Virus record (IMG/VR): IMGVR_UViG_3300013116_000108
Coordinates: 62,001 to 126,000 of that record
Length of the DNA stretch: 64,000 nucleotides
Direction: 5' to 3' (one strand)
A model generated the notes under the pieces. The model saw only the letters and a program-made list of their open reading frames with translations, searched no databases and was not told the origin of the DNA. Below, in pieces: positions 1 through 44,660 of this stretch (positions within the stretch are counted from its first letter, which is position 1; each line of letters opens with the position of its first letter). The position numbers and the translations under genes were made by a program.

Positions 1-549
1 GTTAGTTTCGTATACTTCATTGTGTGCTAAGGCATAGGCTACTAACTGTGTTTTATAATCATCTACCCATTCGTCTTTTTTAGGTTTATTTGTTTGTTTA
101 AAATCAATAATACTAGGTTCGCCGTTAAAAACACCTACAGCATCAGTTGTACCAGCATATAATTCTGGGAAATACATAGGAACTTCTGTTCCCCATATTT
201 CATCAACATCACACATACCTTCATCAATAATAACTTGTGCCATTTTATTTGCTTGTTGGCTAAATGGATTAGATCCAGGAGAATTTAATACACTTTCAAT
301 ACAATAATCTTCTAGGTATTTGTGCATCCTAGTACCGCGTCCTGCCGCCTCAGTAACAATTTCTTGTGCTTTTGCTTCACCTACACGTTTTTTCCAATTA
401 GCAAGTGCTTGACGCTTTTCCTCGCTTTTAGTTTTATCAAGTATAGTCGTAACACTAGGAACGGCTGTGCCGTTAGGAGTCGTGTAAAGGCGTTTGCCTT
501 CAACACTATTTCGTTTTAATTGAGTGTATTGGAACTTTTCTGTGATCAT
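1..549 (-). CDS. PD-(D/E)XK exonuclease, T4-like myophage type (runs off the window edge; absent from the ORF track)
   Basis: Manual translation from ATG at 549: MITEKFQYTQLKRNSVEGKRLYTTPNGTAVPSVTTILDKTK...YAGTTDAVG...IIDFKQTNKPKK...DYKTQLVAYALAHNE; open to base 1. Confidence 0.8.
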   Translation of the reverse strand, partial: MITEKFQYTQLKRNSVEGKRLYTTPNGTAVPSVTTILDKTKSEEKRQALANWKKRVGEAKAQEIVTEAAGRGTRMHKYLEDYCIESVLNSPGSNPFSQQANKMAQVIIDEGMCDVDEIWGTEVPMYFPELYAGTTDAVGVFNGEPSIIDFKQTNKPKKDEWVDDYKTQLVAYALAHNEVYETN

Positions 550-555
550 TTACAA

Positions 556-584
556 AGTATAACAGGTTTACAACCTGCTGTCAA
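556..584 (-). promoter_or_regulatory. sigma70-type promoter; leaderless, 6 nt from -10 to ATG
   Basis: TTGACA (584-579), 17 nt, TATACT (561-556), ttgtaa, ATG (549). Confidence 0.8.
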
Positions 585-601
585 GTCTATTTGACTTTAA
601 T

Positions 602-1060
602 TTACCACTTACGACAACTCCAGTACCTTGCTTTTGTCTTAGGTCCTGGATTATCACAGTTATGCCTTGCTCTAAATGATTTTCTTGCTTTAGGATTATT
701 CTTTCTAATTTTCATAGCCTTGCCCTTAACACTAGAACCGCCATGACCAAAGTTTACTTTTTTAACATTTCCTGTTTTAGGATCTTTAACATAAACTTTA
801 AATTTCTTAACGTCACCTTGCATTGGCTTGTTAAGTTTTACTTTACGACCTTGATACTCTGCTTCAAACGTATCACTTTCATCAATACTATAACCTAAGT
901 ATCCGTAGTCTTCAAAAAATTCGTTATCACTATCGTATGAATATTCAGTTTCGCTAACTTTTACACAGTTATTAACACGTTTACCTTTGTTTTTTCCTGT
1001 GCCGGGTTTAGTTCCTTGTTTTTTGTAACCATCCCAACAATCTATTTCACTTATTCTCAT
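602..1060 (-). CDS. Basic DUF6321-like phage protein, probable head/internal protein
   Basis: C-terminal YQGRKVKLNKP...KKFKVYVKDPKTGNVKKVNFG...RKSFRARHNC...KARYWSCRKW and N-terminal CWDGYKK...NNCVK modules typical of marine T4-like phages; starts MRISEI. Confidence 0.6.
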   Translation of the reverse strand: MRISEIDCWDGYKKQGTKPGTGKNKGKRVNNCVKVSETEYSYDSDNEFFEDYGYLGYSIDESDTFEAEYQGRKVKLNKPMQGDVKKFKVYVKDPKTGNVKKVNFGHGGSSVKGKAMKIRKNNPKARKSFRARHNCDNPGPKTKARYWSCRKW

Positions 1061-1064
1061 AAAT

Positions 1065-1397
1065 TTACCTTCTTTTGTTTAATGCTCGTTTGGCCATATC
1101 ATCTACTTTTTTATCAGCATCTATTTCTGGCTCTTCAGCGTCGATTGAATCATTGTCTATTTCATCAGGGGATTTTAGTATAATACTATCCTGATTTATG
1201 TCAGCGATAAGGTTTTGTAAATTAGGATTTTCGTCGTATGCTTTTTTAATAGCAGGATAACTTAAAGGTATTCCCATTTTTTGACCCATAGCAATAAAGG
1301 CCTTCATAGGCATTTCTTTGTTGTCACCTTCTATTTTGTTGGCTAGGAAAGCCATTAATGAAGATAATTTAGTAGGAGCAAACTCAACGAGTCGCAT
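1065..1397 (-). CDS. Hypothetical protein, probable head protein
   Basis: 110-aa ORF in a late operon; N-terminus MRLVEF. Confidence 0.55.
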   Translation of the reverse strand: MRLVEFAPTKLSSLMAFLANKIEGDNKEMPMKAFIAMGQKMGIPLSYPAIKKAYDENPNLQNLIADINQDSIILKSPDEIDNDSIDAEEPEIDADKKVDDMAKRALNKRR

Positions 1398-11775: not shown

Positions 11776-12577
11776 GCATCTCTTCATTTAGAAATCGCCA
11801 GCAGTCTTGGTTCATATAATCTAGGCGGTTGTTATCAACTAAATATTTTCTCATTGCTTTAAGATTATTTTCTGCCCAATCAATATAACGGGTTTTATCT
11901 CTAAATTTTAAATCATCTACACTTATCCTAGAATTAGGATATTTTTGGTTATAGTAATTCCTAAAAATGTTTCTTTCTGGGTGCCAAGTTAGTTCTGGAG
12001 ATTCTGTATACCATTCATGTGATATTTCAGCAATATCCTTAGGACAGTTACGGTCTTTGAAAAACATACATACAGACCAATGTATTGTCCAATACGGATT
12101 ATCATAATCTAACCATTTCCAAACTGGCTCTCTAAAAACATTATAATCGTAATGTGTTGGAAACCATTTAGCATTTTCAACAAATACAGTATTAATAGTT
12201 TCGTATTCCCCTTCACCCGGTTGCTCTCTAATAACTTTATCTACATCAGGATTTCCAGTTTCTTGTTTCCATTTATGTTTGGGATCTTGTTCCTTAAGGA
12301 AACGTTTAATTTCCATTTCATTTTTAAAATTAACCCTACATTCTTCAGTCCACTCACCTGCCCTGCTAGGAAGTCGCTGTGCTTCTTCAAATAGTATAGG
12401 ATGTCCAGGAAAAGAGTTATGCGACGAATATCTATTTCTATTAGGAGCCATTTTAGAAAATGAAAAGTCTTGTGATAAATCTTGGGAATTTAAAACGGCT
12501 GTTATGTATTCTCCACCTGCTCCAGGGGGATATACTAACACTCTTTGATGATCTTTAAACCAATCTCTAGGAGTCAC
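11768..12577 (-). CDS. Hypothetical protein, possibly sulfotransferase-like
   Basis: [13 protein letters not shown]-terminal loop; likely GTG start at 12577 (the ORF-track start overlaps the ferredoxin). Confidence 0.4.
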
Positions 12578-12917
12578 CGGGTTCTTCCTTAAAGAACTCC
12601 ATTTTGCCATTTGGGTAATTTTTAGGATCGAATTTTTCATGCTCAGGCATTGGGTCTCCGTTCTCAGTTATTACTGGCCATCCATGTTCGTTAGCATACT
12701 TCCAATTAAAATCTACCCATTTAGCACCATGTTCTGTAGTATCAGAGTGTATCGCATCAACTGGACATTCTGGTTCACATACTCCACAATCAATACATTC
12801 ATCTGGATTAATAACCAGTGTGTTTATTCCTTCATAAAAACAATCAACTGGGCATACCTCCACACAGTCTTTATGTTTACAATTAATACATCCGTCATCT
12901 ACTATATAGGTACTCAT
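12567..12917 (-). CDS. fdxA: 7Fe (3Fe-4S/4Fe-4S) ferredoxin
   Basis: [21 protein letters not shown] and [16 protein letters not shown], FdI-type. Confidence 0.9.
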
Positions 12918-13942
12918 ATTATTTCCTTATTCATACAATTTTCACATATTTGTGATTCTTTATTTTTCCAAACATTGTTTAAATGTTTAGTAAAAAACTT
13001 GTGAGATAAAATCTCTATTAAACTAAATTTATTAATATTATTAAAATCCTGTGGGAATTTTTTTCTAATAGACAGCATTGACCATTCGTTGTCATAAAAC
13101 GCATTATTGGCATTATCTGAAATGAAACAACACGGCCATATCCTGCCTTTAACATCGACTTGTAATGCCAAGTCTTTTAGCCAAGGACAATTAAATTCAT
13201 GTTCAATACTTTTATCTGCCCAAAAATGAACTCCTTCTTTATCAGGATAAAAATCTTCTTGAAGTGATTGTAACTCTTTATAAACTTCATTACTAGGTGC
13301 GGTAATAACTACTTCAGGCATACCTTTATATTCTTTAGCAAATATTTCTTTATCGTAACTTTCACTTATTGTAAAATACCTAAATCCTAAACTACGAGCA
13401 AACTCTTTTGCTTTTTGTACTTGATGTTTATTATGGTCAAATATAATCATACGCCAATGTGCTGTGCCGCCATACGATATAAATTCTTTAGCATTACTTA
13501 TTATCTTTTTAAAGTCAGTTCCTCGCCTATGAATGTAATTAGTATCCTCTAATCCATCAATTGAAAAAACAACTTCGTGCTTTTTAAATTTTTGTAAAAC
13601 AGTTGCTAACTCTCGCCAGTGTTCTAAACTTCTTAACCCCCCGTTAGTATGTATAGAAACCATATCAGTAATATTACCAGTGCTGGCTACTTTGTCAAGC
13701 ATATTAACAATATTAGGATTCATCATAGGGTCACCAAAATTTCCATTTAATGTTAATGCTGATATACTACTATCTTCAAATAACTTTGTCCATGTTTCCA
13801 TACTCATATGCTCTAAGCCAATATGAGGATTAACTTCTCCACCATCAATATTCCTAGAACATCCTGGACAAAACGAATTACAATAAGTTGTCGTTTCTAC
13901 CTGTAAATGTTTAATTACGTTGATGTAAGTTGTACTTGACAT
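12914..13942 (-). CDS. Radical SAM enzyme with SPASM/twitch-like domain
   Basis: [39 protein letters not shown]; paralog of 5459-6547. Confidence 0.9.
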
Positions 13943-14066
13943 TAGTTATACTGTCGACTGTTCTCTTATGTCTTAGATAAGAATTATTAGCATACCAAAA
14001 TCCAGCAACAAAAGATATTGCCATTACTGATACTATTGCTAGTAAGTGCCAAATTATAAAAGTCAT
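13911..14066 (-). CDS. 51-aa single-pass membrane peptide (absent from the ORF track)
   Basis: GGAG RBS; [51 protein letters not shown]. Confidence 0.6.
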   Translation of the reverse strand: MTFIIWHLLAIVSVMAISFVAGFWYANNSYLRHKRTVDSITNVKYNLHQRN

Positions 14067-14067
14067 A

Positions 14068-14610
14068 TTATTCTCCTTCCTTAATTAATCGATCCTTTTT
14101 TAATTGATCTATATTCATTTCTTCGTATTTCTCAAACGGCTGATGTATCCACGGACTTGTTTCTAAATAATCTACATAATACCAAGGTGTAAACTTTGAT
14201 ACACCCTTAACCCATAAAGTTGCTGTACGGAGATCATCTATAAAAAATCCATGATAATGTTCTAACCATTTAACACACTTTTCAAGTGTTAATCCAGAAT
14301 CTGCTAAATCATCAACCAACAAAACTTTATTACCTAAGTTTGGCGAAGTCTTTGCTAATGAATTACCAAATACAATTTGTCCTTGTTTGTCTTTGACGCC
14401 TGCTCCATGGTATGATTCAACCGACATAACTGCTAAAGGTACATCAAAAATACGAGCCAAAACATCTCCTACTCTTAGTCCGCCTTTTGCTATACAAACT
14501 ATTTGATTAAAATCATAACCATCATCTGAGATTTTTACTGCTAAATCTTCTATTGCTTTATTGTATTCATCCCAACTAACATAAAGATGTTTATCGTCCC
14601 ATTCTTTCAT
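14068..14610 (-). CDS. Type I phosphoribosyltransferase (xanthine/guanine PRT-like)
   Basis: VCIAKGGL, PRPP-binding loop VLLVDDLADSGLTL, WIHQPFE. Confidence 0.85.
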   Translation of the reverse strand: MKEWDDKHLYVSWDEYNKAIEDLAVKISDDGYDFNQIVCIAKGGLRVGDVLARIFDVPLAVMSVESYHGAGVKDKQGQIVFGNSLAKTSPNLGNKVLLVDDLADSGLTLEKCVKWLEHYHGFFIDDLRTATLWVKGVSKFTPWYYVDYLETSPWIHQPFEKYEEMNIDQLKKDRLIKEGE

Positions 14611-14611
14611 A

Positions 14612-15175
14612 TTATTCCTCTTCTAATAAGTTAATGTGTAATGCTACTAAATGAGCATAAGCCACCGCATGGGCTTTCTTAAAATAATAACTGCCATCAG
14701 CAGGCTTATCCCATACAGTTTCCGCGATTGTTTTCCAGTCGTATTTTCTAAGGTTTGCTTTGCCTGGTCTCATTACTGCTAAAAACATAGCCATCCTTGT
14801 CATGCTATCTGGTTTTAGTTGCTGTAATAAATCAAAATGATTATTAACGTGAATTACTTTTTCACAAAATTCTTTACTTGTCCACAAACGTTGCCAATTA
14901 GGTTCTTTAGCAAGTAATGTATTCATATGTTCTTCGTTTTTAATACCTTGGTATACGTTTACATTTAAAAAGTCTACTTTAAAATATCCTCGTCCTTCCG
15001 CTGTTTCGTGATCAATACTTGCTTGTCCAGTCATAGGATCAACTGGAATGTCTACAAAATAAGCACCTGTGTTGTGCTTCTTACCGCTGTCTAGTGTAGC
15101 AGGTATGTGTTTTAACTTGCTTAATATATCTTCTCTATTAGCAAAGTCTATATCAATGTCAGGTAATTTTACCAT
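14612..15175 (-). CDS. Minimal DNA polymerase III alpha (C-family)-like catalytic core
   Basis: PDIDIDF, HNTGAY, KVDFLNV, YFKKAHAVAYA match DnaE motifs PDxDxDF, HAAGV, KxDFLGL, FNKSHAxAY; only 187 aa. Confidence 0.75.
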   Translation of the reverse strand: MVKLPDIDIDFANREDILSKLKHIPATLDSGKKHNTGAYFVDIPVDPMTGQASIDHETAEGRGYFKVDFLNVNVYQGIKNEEHMNTLLAKEPNWQRLWTSKEFCEKVIHVNNHFDLLQQLKPDSMTRMAMFLAVMRPGKANLRKYDWKTIAETVWDKPADGSYYFKKAHAVAYAHLVALHINLLEEE

Positions 15176-15912
15176 TAAAACCCTACCTCTTTTAATGTTT
15201 CTTTTACAACTTTAGACTCTCTGTTAAACTTTATAAAATATTGTCTCCAATAGTCTGGATCAATGTATTCGTAAACTAGTTGTATTTGTTCTTCGTTTAG
15301 TTTACCTAAAAATTCTTTACCTGTGTCTGTATTAAAAATCACCCAACAACTAATACGACCATTAATGATATCTTGTACAATTTTATTTGAATTGTTAGCA
15401 AAGAAATAACTACTGCTTTGTATGTTGTCCCCACAACTTTCTGCCCACTTGTCCATAGTAACCAAACTTCTAGTTAAAGCATCTTCCCAATGCTCTGTTT
15501 TAAGGTAACCTGATAACCAGTCTAAGTAATATTGCTCTGTACACCAACGATCTAATTTAAACTTACTGTTAATAACATATTCAATATATCGTTTTGTGTT
15601 TACGACCTTATAGTCAATTAAAAACTTACCAAACTTTACAAAGGCATTATAATAATTGCTCTTAACAAAATCAGCATATTTAAGTTTGTTTGAGTTTGGC
15701 TGTGTTTGTTTAAAGAAAATAATGTATGCTTGTTGCCCTAGCCTAACGTGTGGTTCGTCTTTCTGTTCCCAACGTCTTTTAGATTCGCACATATGAGCCA
15801 GCAATGTAGTTTCTTTTACAAAGCCTCTATCACAATATTTACACATGTGTTTCTTTGGTGCTTTGTAAGTGGTTGCGGCTGTTTTTATTATATCTGCCAT
15901 TGCTAAATTCAC
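15175..15912 (-). CDS. Zn-finger-containing replication-region protein
   Basis: CKYCDRGFVKETTLLAHMC; lies between the clamp loader and the mini-polymerase. Confidence 0.55.
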   Translation of the reverse strand: MNLAMADIIKTAATTYKAPKKHMCKYCDRGFVKETTLLAHMCESKRRWEQKDEPHVRLGQQAYIIFFKQTQPNSNKLKYADFVKSNYYNAFVKFGKFLIDYKVVNTKRYIEYVINSKFKLDRWCTEQYYLDWLSGYLKTEHWEDALTRSLVTMDKWAESCGDNIQSSSYFFANNSNKIVQDIINGRISCWVIFNTDTGKEFLGKLNEEQIQLVYEYIDPDYWRQYFIKFNRESKVVKETLKEVGF

Positions 15913-16379
15913 TTAACCTCTGCCTTTATATCTTTATCATCCCAACCTAACAATTTTAATTGCTCTTTAAGTTCTTTCTTAGTCACAATAGATGCTAATA
16001 GTTGAACCTCATCTTCTTTCATATTAGGATATAATTTCCTAATAGTTTTATCCAATCCACTAGTGCTAGACTTTGCTTTTTTCTTGTGAGGTATCCATTC
16101 GTGAAACTGTGTTCCCATTTTTGGACTAACAGTAGTTAATAACAACCAATGTAACTTAGGATGTTTTGAACTGTTTATATCAAAAAAGTTTTTGTTAGTA
16201 CGTTCATTAGTTGCTCTTAAATACCATTGCTGTAAAAGTTCCTCACCTTTAACACTTGAACTATATCTGTTATACAAAAAAGGCGAGAATGCTTTCTTTT
16301 CTTCATCAGAAAGATTATCCCAAAATTTCCTATCTTTGCGATCAAGTGCCGGTAACACTTTGTTCAATGGTAAACTCAT
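15909..16379 (-). CDS. Clamp loader small subunit (gp62-like)
   Basis: FSPFLYNRYSS, HPKLHWLLL, FHEWIPHKKK; replication context; start MSLPL at 16379. Confidence 0.6.
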   Translation of the reverse strand: MSLPLNKVLPALDRKDRKFWDNLSDEEKKAFSPFLYNRYSSSVKGEELLQQWYLRATNERTNKNFFDINSSKHPKLHWLLLTTVSPKMGTQFHEWIPHKKKAKSSTSGLDKTIRKLYPNMKEDEVQLLASIVTKKELKEQLKLLGWDDKDIKAEVK

Positions 16380-16882
16380 CCCCATGCTTTGCCTACATCT
16401 ACAACTTCATTATTTCTTGTTACTTCTTTTACAAAGTAAGCACACTTAGGTTTAGGACCATCATGTAACGGTACTGCTAATAATTGTCCTGCTTTTAGTT
16501 TTGGAAAAAACCATCTTACTTCTTGATACACGTCTACAATTTCTACTGGGTAAAAGTCAGGTTTAAAATCAGACAACTGATTAAATACAAACGCCTTAAA
16601 ACCCCTATCATTAATACTTGTTAAACTTAATACTTCTAAGTCTCCGTGATCTTCTTCTCCAATAAGCATACACCAATCTAGTGGCATCTTAATTTGGTGT
16701 CCTCCAATTTTTAATACTAGTGCTGGACTATTGAAACTTTCTAAAAATATTAGCGGTATAAAAAAATAATCCGGATCTTCTGGATCTGAATTATCTAATA
16801 CACCAAACCTCATATCTTCTACTTCGTCTGGTACTTCTGTCATTGGAAAACATTTATTATCTAATGTTAATATTTGACTCAT
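16376..16882 (-). CDS. Hypothetical protein, possibly a degenerate Hint-like beta fold
   Basis: ALVLKIGGHQIKMPLDWCMLIG and VEIVDV...FFPKL...LLAVP loosely resemble Hint blocks B and F. Confidence 0.4.
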   Translation of the reverse strand: MSQILTLDNKCFPMTEVPDEVEDMRFGVLDNSDPEDPDYFFIPLIFLESFNSPALVLKIGGHQIKMPLDWCMLIGEEDHGDLEVLSLTSINDRGFKAFVFNQLSDFKPDFYPVEIVDVYQEVRWFFPKLKAGQLLAVPLHDGPKPKCAYFVKEVTRNNEVVDVGKAWG

Positions 16883-16906
16883 ATTTTATCCTTTTATTAT
16901 ATCTGT

Positions 16907-16935
16907 AGTATAGCATTATTTTGCCTCCCAGTCAA
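16907..16935 (-). promoter_or_regulatory. sigma70 promoter with extended -10
   Basis: TTGACT, 17 nt, TGc-TATACT, spanning the uvsW stop. Confidence 0.7.
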
Positions 16936-18382
16936 CTTTTTCTACCTGGAACGGATAGTTTGCTTCTTTGTAAAATTTCTTTCTTGATGTTAAGTGTCTT
17001 TTGGCAAATTTACAAGTGCTAGTAATATCCCATATTTGTACAAAATCCTTATCCTCTGCTTTACGAATACCTCGTCCAATACTTTGTATTACCCTAACAA
17101 AACTCTTACCTGGTTCTAATAATACTAAATTGAAAATACGAGGAATATTAATACCTACTGCCGCTACTCCATATGTTGCTACTATAATCTTACCATCCAC
17201 ATCAGCAATTTCATCATACTCTGTTTTCCTATCAGCACTCTTAGTAGCACCTGAAACAAATACAGCCTTATCACCCAATAGTTCTACTAACTCATTTCCA
17301 GCACTAATCCTATCTACTAGTATAAGTGTATTACCGGACTCTGATATTTTATTAAATAATCTTGACATATACTTTAACCTATCAGCATTAGTTAATAGAT
17401 ATTTAAGTTCTTGCTGATAGTTGCCGTGGTCACCATAGTCTTGTAATTGTACAACATTAACATGACACTTTGCTAATACACCTTGGGCTTGTAGTTCGCT
17501 GGCTTGTATTCTTGCTGTTACATCACCTAAACTAACATGTAAACTTTTCCATTCAAAGTTTTCTTTAGGTATTGTTCCTGTTAATCCCCAACGTATAGGT
17601 ATATGTGCCATTACACCTGTTAATAAAGTTTTTAGCACATCTGCCTTAGCCATATGTACCTCATCTACCATAATACAAACTACATCTTCTAAAAACTCGC
17701 CAATACTTATAGGTGCTTCAGCATTTTTTGTTTTCTTTAGTAATATGTTTAAACTTTGCCATGTACAAATAGTATGTGTTTTACCAAACTCTTTTCTATC
17801 ACCAAAAAACACACCAACATCAAGACCCATATTAATATAATCTTCTTCTGTTTGTGTTACTAGTGACTTATTAGGAACAATTACAATACTTCTACCATAA
17901 GGTTCTACCTTATTACTTAATACAGCCGTTATCAAAGTCTTACCAGCACCTGTGGCAATTTCTTGTATACTTTGTGGGTTCTCTAAAAACTTATTAATTG
18001 TATCTACTTGATAATCTCTTAATACAATAGGTTCACCTGCTACTACATGTCCTTTTGGCCAAGTAAGATGGCTATACGATTCTTCTGTAACTCTATCAAA
18101 ATTAAAGTTAGTTTTATAATCACGTTGATCGTTTAACTCAATGTCATAATTAAGTTCTTCAAGTACCGGGATAATTTCTGGTAACAGATTTGTGTAAGTA
18201 GATCCGCCTAACTGAAAGAATGCTACTTTGCCATCCCACCTTCCTAATCTTACAGCAGGAAGATATCTAGCATAAGGAACTTCATACTTAAACTTATTAG
18301 ACAGTTTTTTACGAGCATGAAGATCTAAACCCTCAATTTTAATATTAACTTCATCTTTAATATGTAGTATACATTTACTCAT
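16916..18382 (-). CDS. uvsW: SF2 DNA helicase UvsW
   Basis: ATGAGKT, DEVH, GLTGT, VATYGVAAVGINIP, QSIGRGIR. Confidence 0.9.
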   Translation of the reverse strand: MSKCILHIKDEVNIKIEGLDLHARKKLSNKFKYEVPYARYLPAVRLGRWDGKVAFFQLGGSTYTNLLPEIIPVLEELNYDIELNDQRDYKTNFNFDRVTEESYSHLTWPKGHVVAGEPIVLRDYQVDTINKFLENPQSIQEIATGAGKTLITAVLSNKVEPYGRSIVIVPNKSLVTQTEEDYINMGLDVGVFFGDRKEFGKTHTICTWQSLNILLKKTKNAEAPISIGEFLEDVVCIMVDEVHMAKADVLKTLLTGVMAHIPIRWGLTGTIPKENFEWKSLHVSLGDVTARIQASELQAQGVLAKCHVNVVQLQDYGDHGNYQQELKYLLTNADRLKYMSRLFNKISESGNTLILVDRISAGNELVELLGDKAVFVSGATKSADRKTEYDEIADVDGKIIVATYGVAAVGINIPRIFNLVLLEPGKSFVRVIQSIGRGIRKAEDKDFVQIWDITSTCKFAKRHLTSRKKFYKEANYPFQVEKVDWEAK

Positions 18383-19593
18383 TAAAATAATTCATCACTA
18401 TCAACTGTCCATTCTTCATTTTTATTAGACGGTACAACGTCTAATACTTTACTACTTTGAAATATATTTCTTTTATTATACAAACCTTGTCCTATTGTTA
18501 CATCGGCTTTAAAATTCCAATGTTTGTTTTGTAGCCTGCTCATCCTATCAGTTATAATGATCCTTGTGTTATCTGTTGGGTCTTCTGATACCTTAAGTTT
18601 ATTAAACACATTATTTTTACTGTTAATCATTACATTATCAACATTGCCATATTCACTTTTATACCATTCAATAAATTTTGTAATTTCTGAAACATTACTA
18701 ACTGAATGGCTACTCAATCCAACAGCAATCTTTTCAAATCCTAATTCTAAACAAGTAACTATTACATCACTTATTGATTCTGTTACACTCAGATAGTCAT
18801 TAGTAAGAATATCTTTTTGTAGTTTATTAAAATTATACTTGTCTAATACTGAATTGTCAAGATCTATTGCCAATAGTCCGCAACTTTTTATTTGTTCAAT
18901 TAATGTTTTTTGTTTAATATTCTCGTCCCAGTATTCTTCTAATTCTTTTGGAGCATTGTGTATCTGTAAAGAGTTTTCATCTTTAAGAGTAGCACGAATT
19001 TCATAATCATGTTTGTTTTGAATAATTTTATCTAACTTATTAAAGTATTCAATGCTCAAATTTGAAAATTCAAAAGTATTTTCTTTTGCCCAATTATACA
19101 ATGTAATAAAATTTCCTTCAGTGTTATTAATTTGCCATCTCTTTTCTTCTTGATCCCAATTTGAATCAGCATTGTGAATTAAAACATTTTCTCTTAGCAT
19201 TGTATTGACTTCTTTAATCATGTCTTGATTATAAGGAAAATATAGATAAACTAAGTTATCGTCACAATCAAATCGTTTGCTTCGGTCTACAGTTCTAATG
19301 TTGGTACGGAATTCTGGTGTTTTTGTAATTAGTGTAACATCAACTCCTAAATTACGGAATTGCTTACGGTATTTAGCAGTGAGTTTTACTGCCAACTCCC
19401 TTTGTCTACTTGTCATACCTAGACCACGATGTATATAACTTGAAACATTATTAACAAAGTTTACATCGTACCTTGCTAGTTTAATATACATACCAATTCC
19501 TGTATGTCTACCTTTAGGAATTTTAGGTGGTGATACAGAACCAGCCATAACTTCTATACAGTATTCTATATCTTTAGGTAAAAGCATCTTCAT
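18382..19593 (-). CDS. Hypothetical protein
   Basis: 403-aa ORF translationally coupled to uvsW. Confidence 0.55.
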   Translation of the reverse strand: MKMLLPKDIEYCIEVMAGSVSPPKIPKGRHTGIGMYIKLARYDVNFVNNVSSYIHRGLGMTSRQRELAVKLTAKYRKQFRNLGVDVTLITKTPEFRTNIRTVDRSKRFDCDDNLVYLYFPYNQDMIKEVNTMLRENVLIHNADSNWDQEEKRWQINNTEGNFITLYNWAKENTFEFSNLSIEYFNKLDKIIQNKHDYEIRATLKDENSLQIHNAPKELEEYWDENIKQKTLIEQIKSCGLLAIDLDNSVLDKYNFNKLQKDILTNDYLSVTESISDVIVTCLELGFEKIAVGLSSHSVSNVSEITKFIEWYKSEYGNVDNVMINSKNNVFNKLKVSEDPTDNTRIIITDRMSRLQNKHWNFKADVTIGQGLYNKRNIFQSSKVLDVVPSNKNEEWTVDSDELF

Positions 19594-19604
19594 AAAATTT
19601 CCTT

Positions 19605-19635
19605 AAAAAAAATGGGCGGGTGTCAAGTCCCGCCC
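19605..19635 (-). terminator. Rho-independent terminator
   Basis: GGGCGGG/CCCGCCC stem with an 8-T run on the minus strand. Confidence 0.85.
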
Positions 19636-19652: not shown

Positions 19653-20699
19653 CTATGCCGCCCGTTTCATACAGGTCGATACAGCCAAGCTCTGCCACTT
19701 TTCGGAAATCTTCTTAAGGTCACCAACTTTAAGAGCTGTCCTTAAACTCATTTCACGAAGTCTGTTTTTGTTTTCGTAAATGAAAGCAAGTATTTCACTT
19801 TCTTCTTCTTTACTAAAACCATAGCCTTGAAACAAATCACCTTTGTCAGCAATTTGTTTAATCCTTAAAAACTTATCTCTCATTGTATCAAGAGTAAGAT
19901 CTAAATAGTGACATCTTGACATAAGTGCCTCTAAGTGATCTTGTAGTTTTTTAGATTTAACGTTTTCAAACTTAATGTTTGTAATAAAACAAGCAGAACC
20001 TTTAAACTCAAACTCATTTGGTATACCTTCTGCCCTAAGTTTGGCACTATCGGCACTCCACATTAGTTTACGTTTTTTACCTGAGTCTAAAGCCGCCTTC
20101 AAAATGTTCAACGCCAAGTCGTCTAGCAATACAGAGTCACAGTCGTCAAACACAACAACATTACCCGGATCGCTATACTCATAAAGTTTAGCATAAAGTC
20201 CTAAGGCCGTCATAGCACCTTTAACAACTGTATACTTTCGCTTCGTAGCACTAATATCATCAAACAAACTATGTTCGTCTAATGTTTTCTCAACACCGTA
20301 TGATTTACCAACCCCTGGAGGGCCTGTAACAATCAAAGCACGAATGTCGCCATTTTTAAGACTGGCCGCCATTTCATCTAAAATTTCAAAACGTTCATCA
20401 ATTTCTTTAATACGTTTTTCATCACTAACTTGAGAACTAAACTCGCCTTCTTGTTGGCCTTCGTTCATTCCAAGTGTTTCACATTGTTTTAAATAATCCT
20501 GCTCATCTTCGATAAATTCAAAACCAGTTGGCTTAACTGTAACCCTAATTTTACTAAAATCAGGACCAAATACTTTTGAACCGTCAACAGTAAGAAACAT
20601 TCCTTTTTTACCGGAAGTCATGTTCTTTATGAGTGGGAAAATAATGTTCTCAACAGGTTTGTTTCTGTAAGAACCTTTCTTGATATTTACATATGACAT
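19653..20699 (-). CDS. AAA+ ATPase with a small N-terminal domain
   Basis: TGPPGVGKS Walker A, VVVFDDCD Walker B, FITN sensor 1, ALMSRC arginine finger. Confidence 0.8.
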   Translation of the reverse strand: MSYVNIKKGSYRNKPVENIIFPLIKNMTSGKKGMFLTVDGSKVFGPDFSKIRVTVKPTGFEFIEDEQDYLKQCETLGMNEGQQEGEFSSQVSDEKRIKEIDERFEILDEMAASLKNGDIRALIVTGPPGVGKSYGVEKTLDEHSLFDDISATKRKYTVVKGAMTALGLYAKLYEYSDPGNVVVFDDCDSVLLDDLALNILKAALDSGKKRKLMWSADSAKLRAEGIPNEFEFKGSACFITNIKFENVKSKKLQDHLEALMSRCHYLDLTLDTMRDKFLRIKQIADKGDLFQGYGFSKEEESEILAFIYENKNRLREMSLRTALKVGDLKKISEKWQSLAVSTCMKRAA

Positions 20700-39067: not shown

Positions 39068-40112
39068 TGTAATCCTCCAATTTTCCTTCTCTATATAAGT
39101 CTTGTGTTATACAATGTATTCCCCCGTCCCAAAAATACCTATGCCTAAAGTTAAATATTATAGGCTCTACTTTATGCTTTTTAAAGTGGTCAAACACTTC
39201 TTTGTTATAGTTGTTACATATAATTGTATTTTGATCAATAGATAACATATTAACATCAAAAACTGTTTCTTCTACATAGCCTACCCAATCCTTTAACCAC
39301 GTGTTGACAAATTCTATTAATTGATCGTTATGCTCTTCTCCTTTTAACCACCAGCGTCCTCCAACTTTCCATTTCATCTGTAAGAACGGATCAACTTTAG
39401 ACCACGATTGGTCTGGCAAATATAATACGTCCCATCCAGGAAATTGTGTTTTGTAGTCTTGTATATCTTTTAACGACACAATACATCCGGGCTTAACTAC
39501 ACAAAAACAACCATCGGAATGATATCCCCTATGTGATCTGTGTACTCTAAATCCTTCTTTGTTCCAGTTTTCAATTAACTCTTTTTCTAAATCAGGTGGA
39601 GCATTTTCGGCCCACCTTTCATGCGAGTCCCAAAATAAATCTTTACCAACTCTACAAATTTGTGCTGAACTTATAAATGGTGTATAACCTTCCCACGGTG
39701 TATCAAGTGTTTGCTCGGTTATGTATATGTCTTTTTTATCAACCTGATTAACAATGTCAATCATACCACCCTTGTTTAAGAACTCGTTTCTTTCACCTAC
39801 ATATAACTTTTCGCCAACAACACAAAAATGATCTCTTGGGGTCATTGGTGGGCGCCATACATCATTTAGTGATTTATATTTGCCGTCACCTTCAATGTTT
39901 AAAAAACTTCTATATGTTTTTACACCACAAGATTCTAGTATGTCAACTAATTTTAAAAAATCTTCTTCGGTTTCATCAGCAATACGTTTAAGGGGATCTA
40001 AAATTTTATTATTCTTAGGAAATAAATCTTCAAACCATTCTGCTTTAAATCCTGATCCGACCCAGCAATGCTTTAAAGGATCAAATGTAGAATATCCTTT
40101 AATTGGAATCAT
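39060..40112 (-). CDS. Amidinotransferase (glycine/inosamine-phosphate amidinotransferase family)
   Basis: YSTFDPLKHCWVG, PMTPRD, HSDG, GGIHCITQDLYR (Cys-His-Asp residues present). Confidence 0.85.
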   Translation of the reverse strand: MIPIKGYSTFDPLKHCWVGSGFKAEWFEDLFPKNNKILDPLKRIADETEEDFLKLVDILESCGVKTYRSFLNIEGDGKYKSLNDVWRPPMTPRDHFCVVGEKLYVGERNEFLNKGGMIDIVNQVDKKDIYITEQTLDTPWEGYTPFISSAQICRVGKDLFWDSHERWAENAPPDLEKELIENWNKEGFRVHRSHRGYHSDGCFCVVKPGCIVSLKDIQDYKTQFPGWDVLYLPDQSWSKVDPFLQMKWKVGGRWWLKGEEHNDQLIEFVNTWLKDWVGYVEETVFDVNMLSIDQNTIICNNYNKEVFDHFKKHKVEPIIFNFRHRYFWDGGIHCITQDLYREGKLEDYIG

Positions 40113-40707
40113 AGACTGCTATCCAAACATCTTTTTGAAATATAAAATCAGCATCAATGTTAAACTCGTTTCTAAGCCATTCACGACCTGGCTTTCGTAA
40201 TGTAAGATTATGTTTATAACAAAAATCTAATATTGCTTTATTTTGTTCTGTTATTTGATGATTCATAGTTGTATTATCTCTGTACCATTCATAACTAGGA
40301 TAACTAATATCCCAACCTCCTGCTTCATGCCACCAGTTGTAACATTCGTCGTCTGGCCTATAACACATTACAATTTTGCTATCAGGAAACGTTTCTTTTA
40401 TATTGTTTAGATAATAAGCAAAGTTATGACTTAGTATTAACTTAATATCGTCATCTTTACCTAAGTAACTTTGTGCTATTTCTTTTTGCCATAGGTTAAA
40501 CGACCCAAACTCCTTATCTAACCATTGTCCGTTAAGCATTCCAGGACCGTAGTAGTTTCCTATGTGTCCACTATACTTGTGATGTGTGTATGTTTTCTCA
40601 GGTACTAAATCTGTGTTGTCTACGTTAGTGCCGTGGTCTCTAATATGTTGACTTACACCACTCCAACGACTGCCAGGTGCTCCTGTAAAGAAAATCCAAT
40701 TTTTCAT
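40099..40707 (-). CDS. Sulfotransferase-like / P-loop fold protein
   Basis: FFTGAPGSRWSG, ILSH, KIVMCYRP. Confidence 0.45.
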   Translation of the reverse strand: MKNWIFFTGAPGSRWSGVSQHIRDHGTNVDNTDLVPEKTYTHHKYSGHIGNYYGPGMLNGQWLDKEFGSFNLWQKEIAQSYLGKDDDIKLILSHNFAYYLNNIKETFPDSKIVMCYRPDDECYNWWHEAGGWDISYPSYEWYRDNTTMNHQITEQNKAILDFCYKHNLTLRKPGREWLRNEFNIDADFIFQKDVWIAVYDSN

Positions 40708-42925: not shown

Positions 42926-43611
42926 TCGTTTTTTCTTAGCACAAAATAATACCTGACTCCTCTGTCATTTACTTCTTGTTCGAGGGTTAAGATACTACAA
43001 TTTAAAGCACTAGCAGAATTAATAATAAACTCATTAGTCCAATTAAAAAATTCTATCCATTGTGCTTCAGGAGCCTTGTGCTGTTCTCCTGGATTAACTC
43101 TAAAATATAATAAACCGCTAGTCTTTGTTAAGTTTACAGCATTCTTTAATTCAGCATATATTTTATCTACAGTACCAAAATTAATGCTACCTAAACAAAT
43201 AGTAATATCATATTTTTCAGTTGGTTTGTATTCTAATATACTACTGTTAATATCTGCTCTTTCATTGTACGGATCTACACCAGTTAGGTTGTTGATCTTT
43301 CCTTTGAATTCATTATAGCCACAGCCTAAGTCTAAAACTCGTAAAGGCTTTAAGTTATTAACTTCATCTATAATACTTAATCCACTATACTTGTACTTTT
43401 TTGTAATAGGTTGCCAAACAGTAGCAAAGTATTTTTTAAGTACATGATAGTGGATAAGTTCTGTTAAATCTTTAACATTGGTAAAATTAATATCTTTAAT
43501 GTCAACACCAAAAGTTCCATTGATTGCCTGCTGTAAAAGTTTATTGTCATCTAATAGTTGTGGACTAGATTTAAACATAGTACACAGCCTGTCTAAAATT
43601 TTAGTGTTCAT
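42919..43611 (-). CDS. Class I SAM-dependent methyltransferase (paralog of 38474-39067)
   Basis: YKYSG, VLDLGCGYN, GVDP, ICLGSINFG, LLYFRVNPG. Confidence 0.85.
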   Translation of the reverse strand: MNTKILDRLCTMFKSSPQLLDDNKLLQQAINGTFGVDIKDINFTNVKDLTELIHYHVLKKYFATVWQPITKKYKYSGLSIIDEVNNLKPLRVLDLGCGYNEFKGKINNLTGVDPYNERADINSSILEYKPTEKYDITICLGSINFGTVDKIYAELKNAVNLTKTSGLLYFRVNPGEQHKAPEAQWIEFFNWTNEFIINSASALNCSILTLEQEVNDRGVRYYFVLRKNDK

Positions 43612-43618
43612 TAATTAC

Positions 43619-43942
43619 CTATAATGCTTTATGTAGTTGCTTAACTAGTTTATCTTTTGATAAACGTCTATCTAATTCAATACCTTTTTCTCTACCCATT
43701 TCTTCTAACTGTTTTTTAGTTAGTTTAGCAAGAGCTTTTTTTGTAGGTTTAGCAACAGTTTTTTTTGTTGCTGTAGCCTTAGGTGTTGCTTTAGGTTTTG
43801 CTGTAGCCTTAGGTGTTGCTTTTGCTTTAGGCTCTACTTTATATGCTACTGTTGGTGCCTTTTTTGGTTTGGCCGTTTCTTTTGCTTTTTCTTTACCAAA
43901 GAAAATTTCAGTTAGAGTAGGCCATCCTTTGAAAATACTCAT
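43619..43942 (-). CDS. Lys/Ala/Pro-rich histone-H1-like protein with C-terminal Rho-N/HeH-like motif
   Basis: PKAKATPKATAKPKATPKATA; LTKKQLEEMGREKGIELDRRLSKDKLV. Confidence 0.6.
   Translation of the reverse strand: MSIFKGWPTLTEIFFGKEKAKETAKPKKAPTVAYKVEPKAKATPKATAKPKATPKATATKKTVAKPTKKALAKLTKKQLEEMGREKGIELDRRLSKDKLVKQLHKAL
43768..43822. repeat. 25-bp direct repeat with 30-bp period encoding KATPKATA
   Basis: ttgctgtagccttaggtgttgcttt at 43768 and 43798. Confidence 0.9.
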
Positions 43943-43952
43943 TGTATTTCTC

Positions 43953-44660
43953 CTATATGTCTACCACATTATTAAAACTACCAAACTGTACTAGATCTCT
44001 TGTGAGGTCTGTAGTTAGTCCAGTAATTTGTAACATTGGCCTATTGTCCCAACCCATGTTACAAGTGGCGTGTGGTATATCCCGCCACTCCCATGTTATA
44101 CATTGTCCTTTACTCCATTGATGCCAGTTGCTATTACCTAATGAAAACACTTGTCCGTGTTTCCAATCATCTAACATAATAACAAACCTTCTCATAAGCT
44201 CAGGGTTCTTATCTGCTTCTATTTCTACAAAACTATTTCCGCGTTCTTTACGACCCGCAAAATTGTCTATATGCCAATTTAACATTTGTCCTGTTATTTG
44301 GTTATGAAACTTAATTGTTGCTTCTTCCATGCCAAAGTAATTAGCAATTTTTTTAAAAACTTCTATGTCTTCTGCCTTTGTTCTTTTGAATACTTCCATT
44401 TGCGGATTTGCTCCTGCTCTTTCTAAGTCGTATTCTTCTTGATTAGCACTATATATTCTATCTTTGCCATCAACTTTATTTCGTGTAGCCCATGTACTAG
44501 TTACTACTCTTTCTAAGCACTCGTTAACAGCATCTTCCCAATCACCATTAAACGTACAAACTTCTTGATAGTCTTTACTTACTACTTCTGGCCTAAAGTG
44601 CCATTTACTTTGTTTCTTTGTAAAATCCCAACGGCTTTTACCCCAGTCTTCGTTTGTCAT
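43953..44660 (-). CDS. 2OG-Fe(II) oxygenase-like protein
   Basis: KFHNQITGQMLNWHIDNF (HxD), PHATCN, RPMLQITG. Confidence 0.7.
   Translation of the reverse strand: MTNEDWGKSRWDFTKKQSKWHFRPEVVSKDYQEVCTFNGDWEDAVNECLERVVTSTWATRNKVDGKDRIYSANQEEYDLERAGANPQMEVFKRTKAEDIEVFKKIANYFGMEEATIKFHNQITGQMLNWHIDNFAGRKERGNSFVEIEADKNPELMRRFVIMLDDWKHGQVFSLGNSNWHQWSKGQCITWEWRDIPHATCNMGWDNRPMLQITGLTTDLTRDLVQFGSFNNVVDI

What the first reader, a model, noticed from the sequence alone, without database searches (positions are those of the whole stretch)
14612..16379. 187-aa minimal C-family (DnaE-like) polymerase in the replisome operon
Seen in sequence: all three catalytic Asp positions (PDIDIDF and KVDFL) and the finger motif FKKAHAVAY fit into 187 aa. 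There is no PHP, clamp-binding or OB domain. It is coupled to a Zn-finger protein and the clamp-loader subunit. Established: bacterial DnaE is over 1000 aa, and T4-like phages normally use a B-family polymerase. Inference: a stripped-down polymerase, possibly a primase or primer-extender working with the Zn-finger neighbour. Small DnaE-like genes are reported in some Rak2-like jumbo phages, so the family may not be new, but I know of no biochemical characterisation.
Basis: partly seen in the sequence, partly recalled or inferred. Interest (0 to 1): 0.7.

Follow-up and report, generated by a model that had tools for sequence, protein, structure and literature searches.

The report
Half of a split mini-DnaE polymerase
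The 187-residue protein is real and related to the bacterial replicative polymerase, but it is only the back half of a two-piece miniature enzyme already described by computation in giant phages; the front half is encoded elsewhere and nobody has tested the enzyme at the bench.

Summary
The ORF at 14612-15175 (-) exists as described. Its motifs map in order onto E. coli Pol III alpha: D6/D8 to D401/D403, D68 to D555, RPG to 639-641, FKKAH to 755-760. Its AlphaFold model (pLDDT 92) aligns over all 187 residues to alpha 397-778 (Z 9-10), and only C-family polymerases match.

It is not a complete polymerase. It begins exactly at the DxD strand and lacks the N-terminal half of the Pol-beta-type palm, which carries the nucleotide-binding GS loop. 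That half is a separate protein of about 165-185 aa (Pfam PF07733, ending GVGRGSS...EFL[KR]). Relatives encode it 5-180 kb away, next to the gp44 clamp loader.

Three rare natural fusions (375-376 aa) join the two halves. Their model matches DnaE at Z 21.6. A co-fold of the window protein with a relative's N-half scored 0.91, against 0.00 for the best control.

Iyer et al. 2021 (PMC7824862) already described this split minimal Pol III alpha in group 2.2 jumbo phages. The window's contig (204 kb, 56% complete, marine) carries neither the N-half nor PolB.

The Zn-finger neighbour is confirmed. The "clamp-loader subunit" is not. This is a new member of a known, biochemically untested family.

The parts
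14612..15175 (-). C-terminal unit (187 aa) of a split minimal Pol III alpha-like polymerase: second half of the Pol-beta-type palm plus a reduced finger core
   Evidence: phrog_11778 at E 3e-55. AF2 model pLDDT 92. VIA Z 9-10 over 180-184 residues to alpha 397-778, Taq 458-835 and PolC 968-1293. The top 15 Foldseek hits are all Pol III alpha or PolC.
15143..15163 (-). PDIDIDF (residues 5-11). D6 and D8 correspond to E. coli D401 and D403, the metal ligands; D10 corresponds to D405
   Evidence: HMM alignment to 2hnh residues 399-406. Invariant in A2. Lies in the predicted interface with the N-half.
14966..14980 (-). KVDFL (residues 66-70). D68 corresponds to E. coli D555, the third catalytic Asp
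   Evidence: Local alignment of DHETAEGRGYFKVDFLNV with alpha 541-558. K66 and D68 are invariant.
14759..14770 (-). RPGK (residues 136-139), the finger motif equivalent to E. coli FRPG 638-641
   Evidence: R136, P137 and K139 are invariant.
14657..14683 (-). FKKAHAVAY (residues 165-173), the finger motif equivalent to E. coli FNKSHSAAY 755-763
   Evidence: Weak match to positions 774-802 of phrog_405, a full-length DnaE-like profile.
15175..15912 (-). 245-aa protein with an N-terminal C2HC/C2H2 zinc finger and an unassigned domain of about 200 aa. Translationally coupled to the polymerase unit and always directly upstream of it
   Evidence: finger. (TAATG overlap). (synteny in about 70 loci and in phage Ettore). 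phrog_11058.
15909..16385 (-). 158-aa conserved protein (phrog_11758). Candidate divergent clamp-loader small subunit; unproven
   Evidence: Atlas lead: 70 of the 100 nearest clusters belong to the set that carries PF16790, shown at 13% of members for the listed cluster. Not confirmed. Invariant synteny.
16376..16882 (-). 168-aa very conserved protein of unknown fold (phrog_11279), first gene after the helicase in the cluster
   Evidence: Mean column identity 72%. No Pfam, PDB or Atlas match. Synteny.
16916..18382 (-). UvsW-type SF2 DNA helicase that heads the conserved cluster
   Evidence: ResIII, DEAD and Helicase_C, plus weak UvsW_N. phrog_16. Present upstream in essentially all loci with enough DNA.
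14068..14610 (-). Phosphoribosyltransferase gene directly downstream. Not part of the conserved module
   Evidence: PF00156 at E 6e-23. No homologue found in any of the related loci. A relative's contig in run X5 joins 14080 to 14622, skipping this gene.

Best explanation
The gene encodes the C-terminal subunit of a two-subunit, minimal C-family (Pol III alpha-like) nucleotidyltransferase. This subunit supplies the beta-strands with the three metal-binding Asp (D6, D8, D68) and a cut-down finger core (RPGK, FKKAH) that in DnaE contacts the incoming nucleotide and the template. It lacks the first half of the Pol-beta-type palm. That half is the helix and GS loop (GVGRGSS) that hold the triphosphate, and it comes from a separate protein of about 165-185 aa. 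That protein ends at ...EFL[KR], exactly where this one begins (M..PDIDIDF). The split lies inside the DnaE motif ERFLNPER..PDFDVDF. The two proteins are inferred to associate without a covalent bond; there is no room for split-intein pieces. Together they would rebuild one active site. The enzyme has no PHP, thumb, HhH, clamp-binding or OB module. It is therefore inferred to be a distributive, non-proofreading, template-dependent DNA polymerase that assists the phage's family B replicase. Its likely setting is recombination-dependent replication or repair. This half sits in a fixed cluster: UvsW helicase, p168, p158, Zn-finger protein, C-half. The other half sits beside the gp44 clamp loader. 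Shown: homology, fold, residue mapping, the split point, co-occurrence, synteny and the predicted interface. Inferred: assembly in vivo, polymerase activity, and biological role.
For: Fold and motifs of the C-half. N-half family: stand-alone proteins of 163-186 aa with PF07733. Natural fusions P0176, P0389 and P0390; alignment A6 shows the halves abut with about 10 linker residues. hhalign of A6 against E. coli DnaE gives probability 96%, E 3e-9, across the split point at alpha 324-420. The fusion model has pLDDT 92.7 and pTM 0.90. Its top 17 Foldseek hits are all C-family, E down to 4e-8, and VIA gives Z 21.6 to M. tuberculosis DnaE1. Co-fold of the window C-half with the N-half of relative G002: ipSAE 0.91, 0.91 and 0.92, best of 3 controls 0.00. 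That mark was reached by 58 of 80 solved complexes and 2 of 110 mismatched pairs, though the counts hold only roughly because my own alignments were used. The interface is N-half 146-159 (GS loop) and 176-185 against C-half 5-12, 62-72 and 166-179. Co-occurrence in cultured jumbo phages: C-half in 96 records, N-half in 90. Both halves plus PolB are present in the 99%-complete G001, in G002 and in phage Ettore. Synteny. Prior description: Iyer et al. 2021, PMC7824862.
Against: No N-half was found on the window's own 204-kb contig with PF07733, phmmer or a 116-sequence HMM. Its usual neighbours, gp44 and PolB, are absent too. The contig is 56% complete, which could explain this, but true loss cannot be excluded. 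The co-fold used a non-cognate N-half; G002's own C-half is 52% identical to the window's. The high score may also partly reflect the model's memory of intrachain contacts in solved Pol III alpha structures. No enzymatic data exist for any family member. Without a thumb or a duplex-binding domain, DNA polymerase activity is not guaranteed.
Confidence: 0.8

Rival explanations
1. One reading: a self-sufficient 187-aa minimal polymerase or primase that works with the adjacent Zn-finger protein.
For: All three Asp and the finger motifs lie in one ORF. The gene is translationally coupled to a Zn-finger protein and always next to it. No N-half is found on the contig.
Against: The ORF starts at the DxD strand and lacks the GS-loop half of the Pol-beta-type fold. 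A dedicated partner family exists and co-occurs with it, and natural fusions exist. The C-half alone matches Pol III alpha far more weakly (E 1e-2, Z about 10) than the fusion does (E 4e-8, Z 21.6). A Toprim primase is already encoded on the contig.
Confidence: 0.05
2. The reconstituted enzyme is a Pol-beta-fold nucleotidyltransferase but not a templated DNA polymerase. It could, for example, add untemplated nucleotides, modify nucleic-acid ends or make a nucleotide signal.
For: The thumb, HhH, OB and clamp-binding modules are all absent. The Pol-beta-type fold supports many chemistries; weak Cid1, PAP and ANT hits follow the polymerases.
Against: The DnaE-specific finger motifs RPG and F-x-K-x-H are invariant, and the fusion model matches only C-family polymerases strongly. 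Both halves sit among replication and recombination genes (UvsW, gp44).
Confidence: 0.12
3. A decaying remnant of a captured DnaE gene with no function.
For: It is much shorter than DnaE. The gene is often annotated as hypothetical or as 'truncated' (PMC5259590).
Against: There are thousands of intact homologues of constant length with invariant catalytic residues. Gene order is fixed from marine phages to Pseudomonas phage PA5oct relatives. An RNA-library run holds short contigs, 90-95% alike, over parts of the operon, which is weak evidence of transcription.
Confidence: 0.02

Closest known systems
Split minimal DNA polymerase III alpha of group 2.2 jumbo phages (Iyer, Anantharaman, Krishnan, Burroughs, Aravind 2021, Viruses 13:63; PHROG 11778 for the C-terminal unit)
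   Same: Same family: phrog_11778 at E 3e-55, and 35-49% identity to the PA5oct, Atu_ph07, 121Q, RaK2, GAP32 and CBB proteins. Same architecture, with the C-terminal Mg2+/template-binding unit as a stand-alone protein. Same gene cluster as in the PA5oct-like phage Ettore.
   Different: This copy comes from an uncultured marine phage contig whose N-terminal unit and PolB are not on the assembled 56% of the genome. Added here: the exact split point, natural fusions, models of the fusion and of the heterodimer, and the two conserved gene clusters.
Bacterial Pol III alpha (DnaE1) and PolC, e.g. E. coli 2HNH/5FKV, Taq 2HPI/3E0D, M. tuberculosis 5LEW, Geobacillus PolC 3F2B
   Same: Pol-beta-type palm with the D401/D403/D555 triad and the RPG and FNKSH finger motifs, in the same order. 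Structural alignment Z 9-10 for this half and up to 21.6 for the fusion.
   Different: About 360 aa in two chains against 1160 aa in one. No PHP, thumb, distal fingers, beta-clamp motif, HhH, OB or tau-binding tail. About 15-20% identity. The Pfam PF07733 threshold is not reached by this half.
Cyanobacterial split DnaE joined by a split intein (DnaE-N/DnaE-C)
   Same: A C-family polymerase encoded by two distant genes.
   Different: Those halves carry intein pieces and are spliced into a full-length DnaE. Here the N-half ends and the C-half begins with no extra residues, and the fusions have only about 10 linker residues. Association must therefore be non-covalent, and the whole is minimal. 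The description of the cyanobacterial system comes from general knowledge.
Unsplit PHP-less DnaE-like ORF in related phage contig G005 (L082)
   Same: A phage-encoded DnaE-like protein without PHP, with the GS loop and DxD in one chain; PF07733 at E 1.7e-44.
   Different: A single chain of at least 414 aa with a thumb-sized insert, lying next to the DnaB-like helicase. It co-exists with a split C-half on the same contig (L066), so it is a separate paralogous lineage.

Membership tests
C-family DNA polymerase (Pol III alpha / DnaE / PolC) | Pol-beta-type palm strands carrying the three catalytic Asp (E. coli D401, D403, D555) | tested here: met
   D6, D8 and D68 align to D401, D403 and D555, are invariant, and superpose structurally.
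C-family DNA polymerase (Pol III alpha / DnaE / PolC) | N-terminal palm half with the GS nucleotide-binding loop (E. coli GRGSGAGS, about residues 361-368) in the same protein | tested here: not met
   The ORF starts at the equivalent of alpha residue 397. In relatives the loop sits in a separate N-half protein. It was not found on the window's own contig.
C-family DNA polymerase (Pol III alpha / DnaE / PolC) | Finger motifs RPG and F-N/K-K-S/A-H | tested here: met
   RPGK at 136-139 and FKKAH at 165-169 align to alpha 639-641 and 755-760.
C-family DNA polymerase (Pol III alpha / DnaE / PolC) | PHP domain, thumb, clamp-binding motif, HhH, OB fold | tested here: not met
   There are no Pfam hits. 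The model covers alpha 397-778 with only 180 of 382 residues and ends there. Aromatic C-terminal tails occur in only 4 of 188 family members, and the window protein is not one of them.
C-family DNA polymerase (Pol III alpha / DnaE / PolC) | Pfam PF07733 above the gathering score | tested here: not met
   No hit for the window protein. The N-halves and the fusion do pass.
C-family DNA polymerase (Pol III alpha / DnaE / PolC) | Template-directed DNA synthesis | not testable with these tools
   This needs a primer-extension assay. No published assay was found.
Split minimal Pol III alpha of group 2.2 jumbo phages, C-terminal unit | Stand-alone protein of about 190 aa that begins at the DxD strand; sequence membership in phrog_11778 | tested here: met
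Split minimal Pol III alpha of group 2.2 jumbo phages, C-terminal unit | A separate N-terminal (NTP-binding) unit encoded at a distant locus of the same genome | tested here: inconclusive
   Absent from the 204-kb contig, which is 56% complete. Present in G001 (95 kb away), G002 (122 kb), PA5oct (43 kb), 121Q (31 kb), RaK2, CBB and GAP32 (34 kb), XacN1 (15 kb), RsoM2USA (4.6 kb) and Atu_ph07 (182 kb).
Split minimal Pol III alpha of group 2.2 jumbo phages, C-terminal unit | Accompanied by a family B DNA polymerase and T4-type replication genes | tested here: inconclusive
   PolB and gp44 are not on the window's contig. UvsW, a Toprim primase and a DnaB-like helicase are. PolB and gp44 are present in G001, G002 and Ettore.
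Split minimal Pol III alpha of group 2.2 jumbo phages, C-terminal unit | The two units bind to form one active site | tested here: inconclusive
   The model supports binding but does not show it: ipSAE 0.91 against 0.00 for the best control, with a non-cognate N-half and my own alignments. It needs a pull-down or a structure.
Intein-split DnaE | Split-intein segments at the junction ends | tested here: not met
   The N-half ends at EFL[KR] and the C-half starts at M..PDIDIDF, with no extra sequence.
T4 gp62-type clamp-loader small subunit (for the neighbour at 15909-16385) | Sequence or profile similarity to gp62 (PF16790, phrog_225) | tested here: not met
   No hit (probability 0.4%), 88, 95 or 98. 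There is only an embedding-based lead. No canonical gp62 exists in the relatives that have gp44, so the role is vacant.
Primase (DnaG/Toprim or archaeo-eukaryotic primase) | Toprim or AEP catalytic domain | tested here: not met
   No such Pfam hit. The fold matches only C-family polymerases. A separate Toprim primase is encoded at G000:C1:48307-49311.

The most novel reading that the evidence does not exclude
The two polymerase halves may be only part of a larger machine. The C-half is invariably encoded with a Zn-finger protein, p158 and p168 behind the UvsW helicase. The N-half is invariably encoded beside the gp44 clamp loader. No canonical gp62 exists in these genomes. The accessory proteins might replace the missing thumb, DNA-binding and clamp-binding modules. 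p158 might be the clamp-loader small subunit. The mini-polymerase would then be physically tied to the clamp loader, as tau ties alpha in bacteria. That would be a modular, multi-subunit C-family polymerase of a kind not described before.
Probability: 0.12. Interest if true: 0.75.

Novelty: new member of a known kind. Interest (0 to 1): 0.38.

Why it matters
If the heterodimer is active, it would be by far the smallest C-family polymerase: about 360 residues in two chains, against more than 1000 in one. It would define the minimal catalytic core of the bacterial replicase fold and give a simple system for studying that fold's mechanism and origin. The family is very common in marine and other jumbo phages, with thousands of sequence clusters, yet its role beside the phage's family B replicase is unknown. 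For this scan the practical lesson is that the finding is a correct recognition of a published, computationally predicted family and not a new class, and that the 187-aa protein should not be treated as a complete enzyme.

Tried and rejected
- N-half on the window's own contig. I searched with PF07733, motif regexes, phmmer and blastp with the fusion's N part, an HMM of 116 N-halves, and the N-halves and neighbours of G001 and G002. Nothing was found. A weak hit at C1:44723-45385 is a coiled-coil, low-complexity protein and was rejected.
- PolB, gp44 and DnaQ on the window's own contig: none.
- p158 as gp62. Tested with a PDB profile, a Pfam scan of 22 members, PF16790 on the own genome and on 25 related records, hhalign against T4 gp62 (probability 0.4%), PHROG cross-scan, phrog_225 on four genomes, and the p158 profile against the T4 genome. 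All were negative.
- p168: no Atlas, Pfam or PDB match.
I rebuilt it as A2 without that row.
- Megablast of the region against cultured phages: no match.
- Supplementary files of Iyer et al. are not held.
- The PA5oct omics paper says nothing specific about these genes.
- A C-terminal clamp-binding tail was considered. It occurs in only 4 of 188 family members, and the window protein is not one of them.
- The split-intein idea was rejected on the alignment.
- Metatranscriptome reads: only short contigs, 90-95% alike, from one RNA library. That is too weak to claim transcription.
Full report
**What is there**

The window's minus strand carries a tight run of genes:
- a 403-aa ORF (18382-19593)
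- a UvsW-type helicase (16916-18382)
- p168 (16376-16882)
- p158 (15909-16385)
- a 245-aa Zn-finger protein (15175-15912)
- the 187-aa ORF of the finding (14612-15175)
- a phosphoribosyltransferase (14068-14610)

Neighbouring genes overlap by 1-10 bases. The Zn-finger gene's stop and the 187-aa gene's start form TAATG, with GAGG upstream. I add RPGK at 136-139.

**Is it DnaE-like?**

Yes.
- Pfam finds nothing, but PHROG 11778 ('DNA polymerase') matches at E 3e-55. A full-length DnaE-like PHROG matches the finger motif weakly.
- A profile of 23 homologues searched against PDB sequences returns only Pol III alpha. It gives three segments in the same order, at E. coli residues 399-420, 616-641 and 752-767.
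- Local alignments place D6/D8 on D401/D403, D68 on D555, RPG on 639-641 and FKKAH on 755-760.
- The AlphaFold model is confident (pLDDT 92). Its top 15 Foldseek hits are all Pol III alpha or PolC.
- VIA-align lays 180-184 of the 187 residues on E. coli alpha 397-778, Taq 458-835 and PolC 968-1293, with Z 9-10 and rmsd 3.3-3.8 A. The next unrelated fold scores Z 3.7.
- The catalytic and finger residues are invariant in the family alignment.

**Why it is not a complete polymerase**

The protein begins at the DxD strand. The Pol-beta-type palm also needs the preceding helix and the GS loop that bind the triphosphate (established knowledge of the fold).

A profile search of 1.8 billion representative proteins found 502 relatives. 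Almost all of those listed are about 190 aa or shorter fragments. One is a 375-aa protein, P0176, whose residues 188-372 are the C-half. Its first 187 residues contain GVGRGSSSAS...IDPIKYKLNIKEF, which is the DnaE GS-loop motif.

Searching with that N part found a family of stand-alone proteins of 163-186 aa. They carry Pfam PF07733 and all end ...WGVGRGSSxxSYxLYLxGxHxIDPIKYxLxxxEFL[KR].

A joint alignment shows the N-halves end exactly where the C-halves begin, with about 10 linker residues in the fusions. That leaves no room for split-intein pieces. hhalign of this alignment against E. coli DnaE gives 96% probability (E 3e-9) across alpha 324-420, which spans the split point. Only three fusion clusters exist, against thousands of split genes.

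The fusion model (pLDDT 92.7, pTM 0.90) matches C-family polymerases much better than the half does. Foldseek E reaches 4e-8 with the top 17 hits all C-family, then drops to E>1. VIA Z reaches 21.6 over 308-355 residues.

**Do the halves bind?**

I co-folded the window's C-half with the N-half of relative G002. The score was 0.91, 0.91 and 0.92; the best of 3 controls was 0.00. That mark was reached by 58 of 80 solved complexes and 2 of 110 mismatched pairs. These counts hold only roughly because my own alignments were used.

The interface pairs the GS loop and the C-terminal EFLR of the N-half with the DxD strand, the KVDFL strand and the FKKAH helix of the C-half. That is what a reconstituted palm requires.

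Caveats: the pair is non-cognate, and the model may be recalling intrachain contacts from solved Pol III alpha structures. The result supports binding but does not show it.

**Where is the N-half?**

It is not on this contig. The window lies in a 204,100-bp IMG/VR record judged 56% complete, which implies a genome of roughly 360 kb. PF07733, single-sequence searches and a 116-sequence HMM find no N-half. The genes that always flank the N-half are absent too, and so are gp44 and PolB.

In relatives both halves are present but far apart:

| Genome | Distance between halves |
|---|---|
| G001 (345 kb, 99% complete) | about 95 kb |
| G002 | 122 kb |
| PA5oct | 43 kb |
| 121Q | 31 kb |
| RaK2, CBB, GAP32 | 34 kb |
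| XacN1 | 15 kb |
| RsoM2USA | 4.6 kb |
| Atu_ph07 | 182 kb |

Among cultured phages the C-half is in 96 records and the N-half in 90, with the same host genera. G001, G002 and Ettore also encode PolB.

The simplest reading is that the partner lies in the unassembled 44% of this genome. True absence cannot be excluded.

**Gene context**

In about 70 IMG/VR loci and in the PA5oct-like phage Ettore the gene order is invariant, with insertions tolerated: UvsW, p168, p158, Zn-finger protein, C-half. The downstream phosphoribosyltransferase is not conserved, and a relative's contig skips it exactly.

The N-half has its own fixed cluster: a roughly 200-aa protein, the N-half, a roughly 130-aa protein, a GroES-like protein, and then the gp44 clamp loader on the same strand. 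gp44 followed in 46 of 47 loci with enough downstream DNA, at a median of 2.8 kb. The same cluster appears in Ettore and G001. Published gene numbers fit as well: CBB_328/332 and Atu_ph07 gp316/gp312.

The Zn finger of the 245-aa protein is real; the rest of that protein is unassigned.

However, no canonical gp62 exists in 25 related records, including complete genomes that do have gp44. p158 therefore remains a candidate.

The contig also encodes a Toprim primase and a DnaB-like helicase, so a primase role for the finding is not needed.

**Literature**

Iyer et al. [quoted passage not shown]

Earlier genome papers had noted a 'truncated' Pol III alpha in CBB and Atu_ph07; by position these are the N-half. 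I found no biochemical work.

**Verdict**

The 'stand-alone minimal polymerase or primase' reading is wrong in one key respect: the protein is half of an enzyme.

The family is known from computation and untested at the bench, so this is a new marine member of a known kind. New here are the split point, the natural fusions, the structural models, the supported interface and the two conserved clusters.

The remaining open idea is that the cluster partners complete a modular polymerase tied to the clamp loader.

Noticed in passing
L082 (G005:C1:1-2561), ORF 3..1244 (-): A related phage contig carries an unsplit, PHP-less DnaE-like ORF of at least 414 aa, cut by the contig end, with the GS loop and DxD in one chain (PF07733 at E 1.7e-44). 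It lies just downstream of a DnaB-like helicase. The same contig also carries a split C-half (L066), so two different reduced C-family forms co-exist in one phage.
   Followed up: partly
L083, L084, L095-L176; Ettore OR805294.1 58721-60856: The N-terminal polymerase unit sits in a fixed cluster with a roughly 130-aa protein, a GroES-like protein and the gp44 clamp loader. In 46 of 47 loci gp44 follows on the same strand, at a median of 2.8 kb.
   Followed up: yes
25 related records including G001 and Ettore: No canonical clamp-loader small subunit (gp62; PF16790, phrog_225) is detectable in genomes that do have gp44. The small subunit must be missing or highly divergent.
   Followed up: partly
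window 14068-14610: The phosphoribosyltransferase gene directly after the polymerase unit is a variable insertion. A contig of marine run X5 joins 14080 to 14622, and the gene is absent from all related loci.
   Followed up: partly
window 12567-13942: A radical SAM/SPASM protein (12914-13942) overlaps the start of a small protein with two 4Fe-4S ferredoxin-type Cys motifs (12567-12917), just downstream of the replication cluster.
   Followed up: no
window 19653-20699: A 348-aa protein (phrog_1250, weak AAA+ matches with a Walker A motif around residue 123) is conserved upstream of the UvsW gene in many related loci. It is distinct from gp44, because G001 has both.
   Followed up: partly
window 19614-19635 and 18832-18860 (-): A strong intrinsic-terminator-like hairpin (7 G-C pairs followed by a T run) lies just before the 403-aa gene. 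A perfect 12/12 sigma-70-like promoter lies inside that gene. Together they may delimit the transcription unit that holds the polymerase cluster.
   Followed up: no
G000:C1:40001-44402 and 176399-189427 (outside the window): The same contig has ORFs that look, by eye, like ClpX and ClpS (43203-44402; 40001-40318) and a giant ORF of 4342 aa (176399-189427).
   Followed up: no
window 13600-19500: The region occurs at 99-100% word share in three marine or seawater metagenome runs of one study, and at about 30% in many others from 2017 to 2025. This phage lineage is therefore widespread in the sea.
   Followed up: partly
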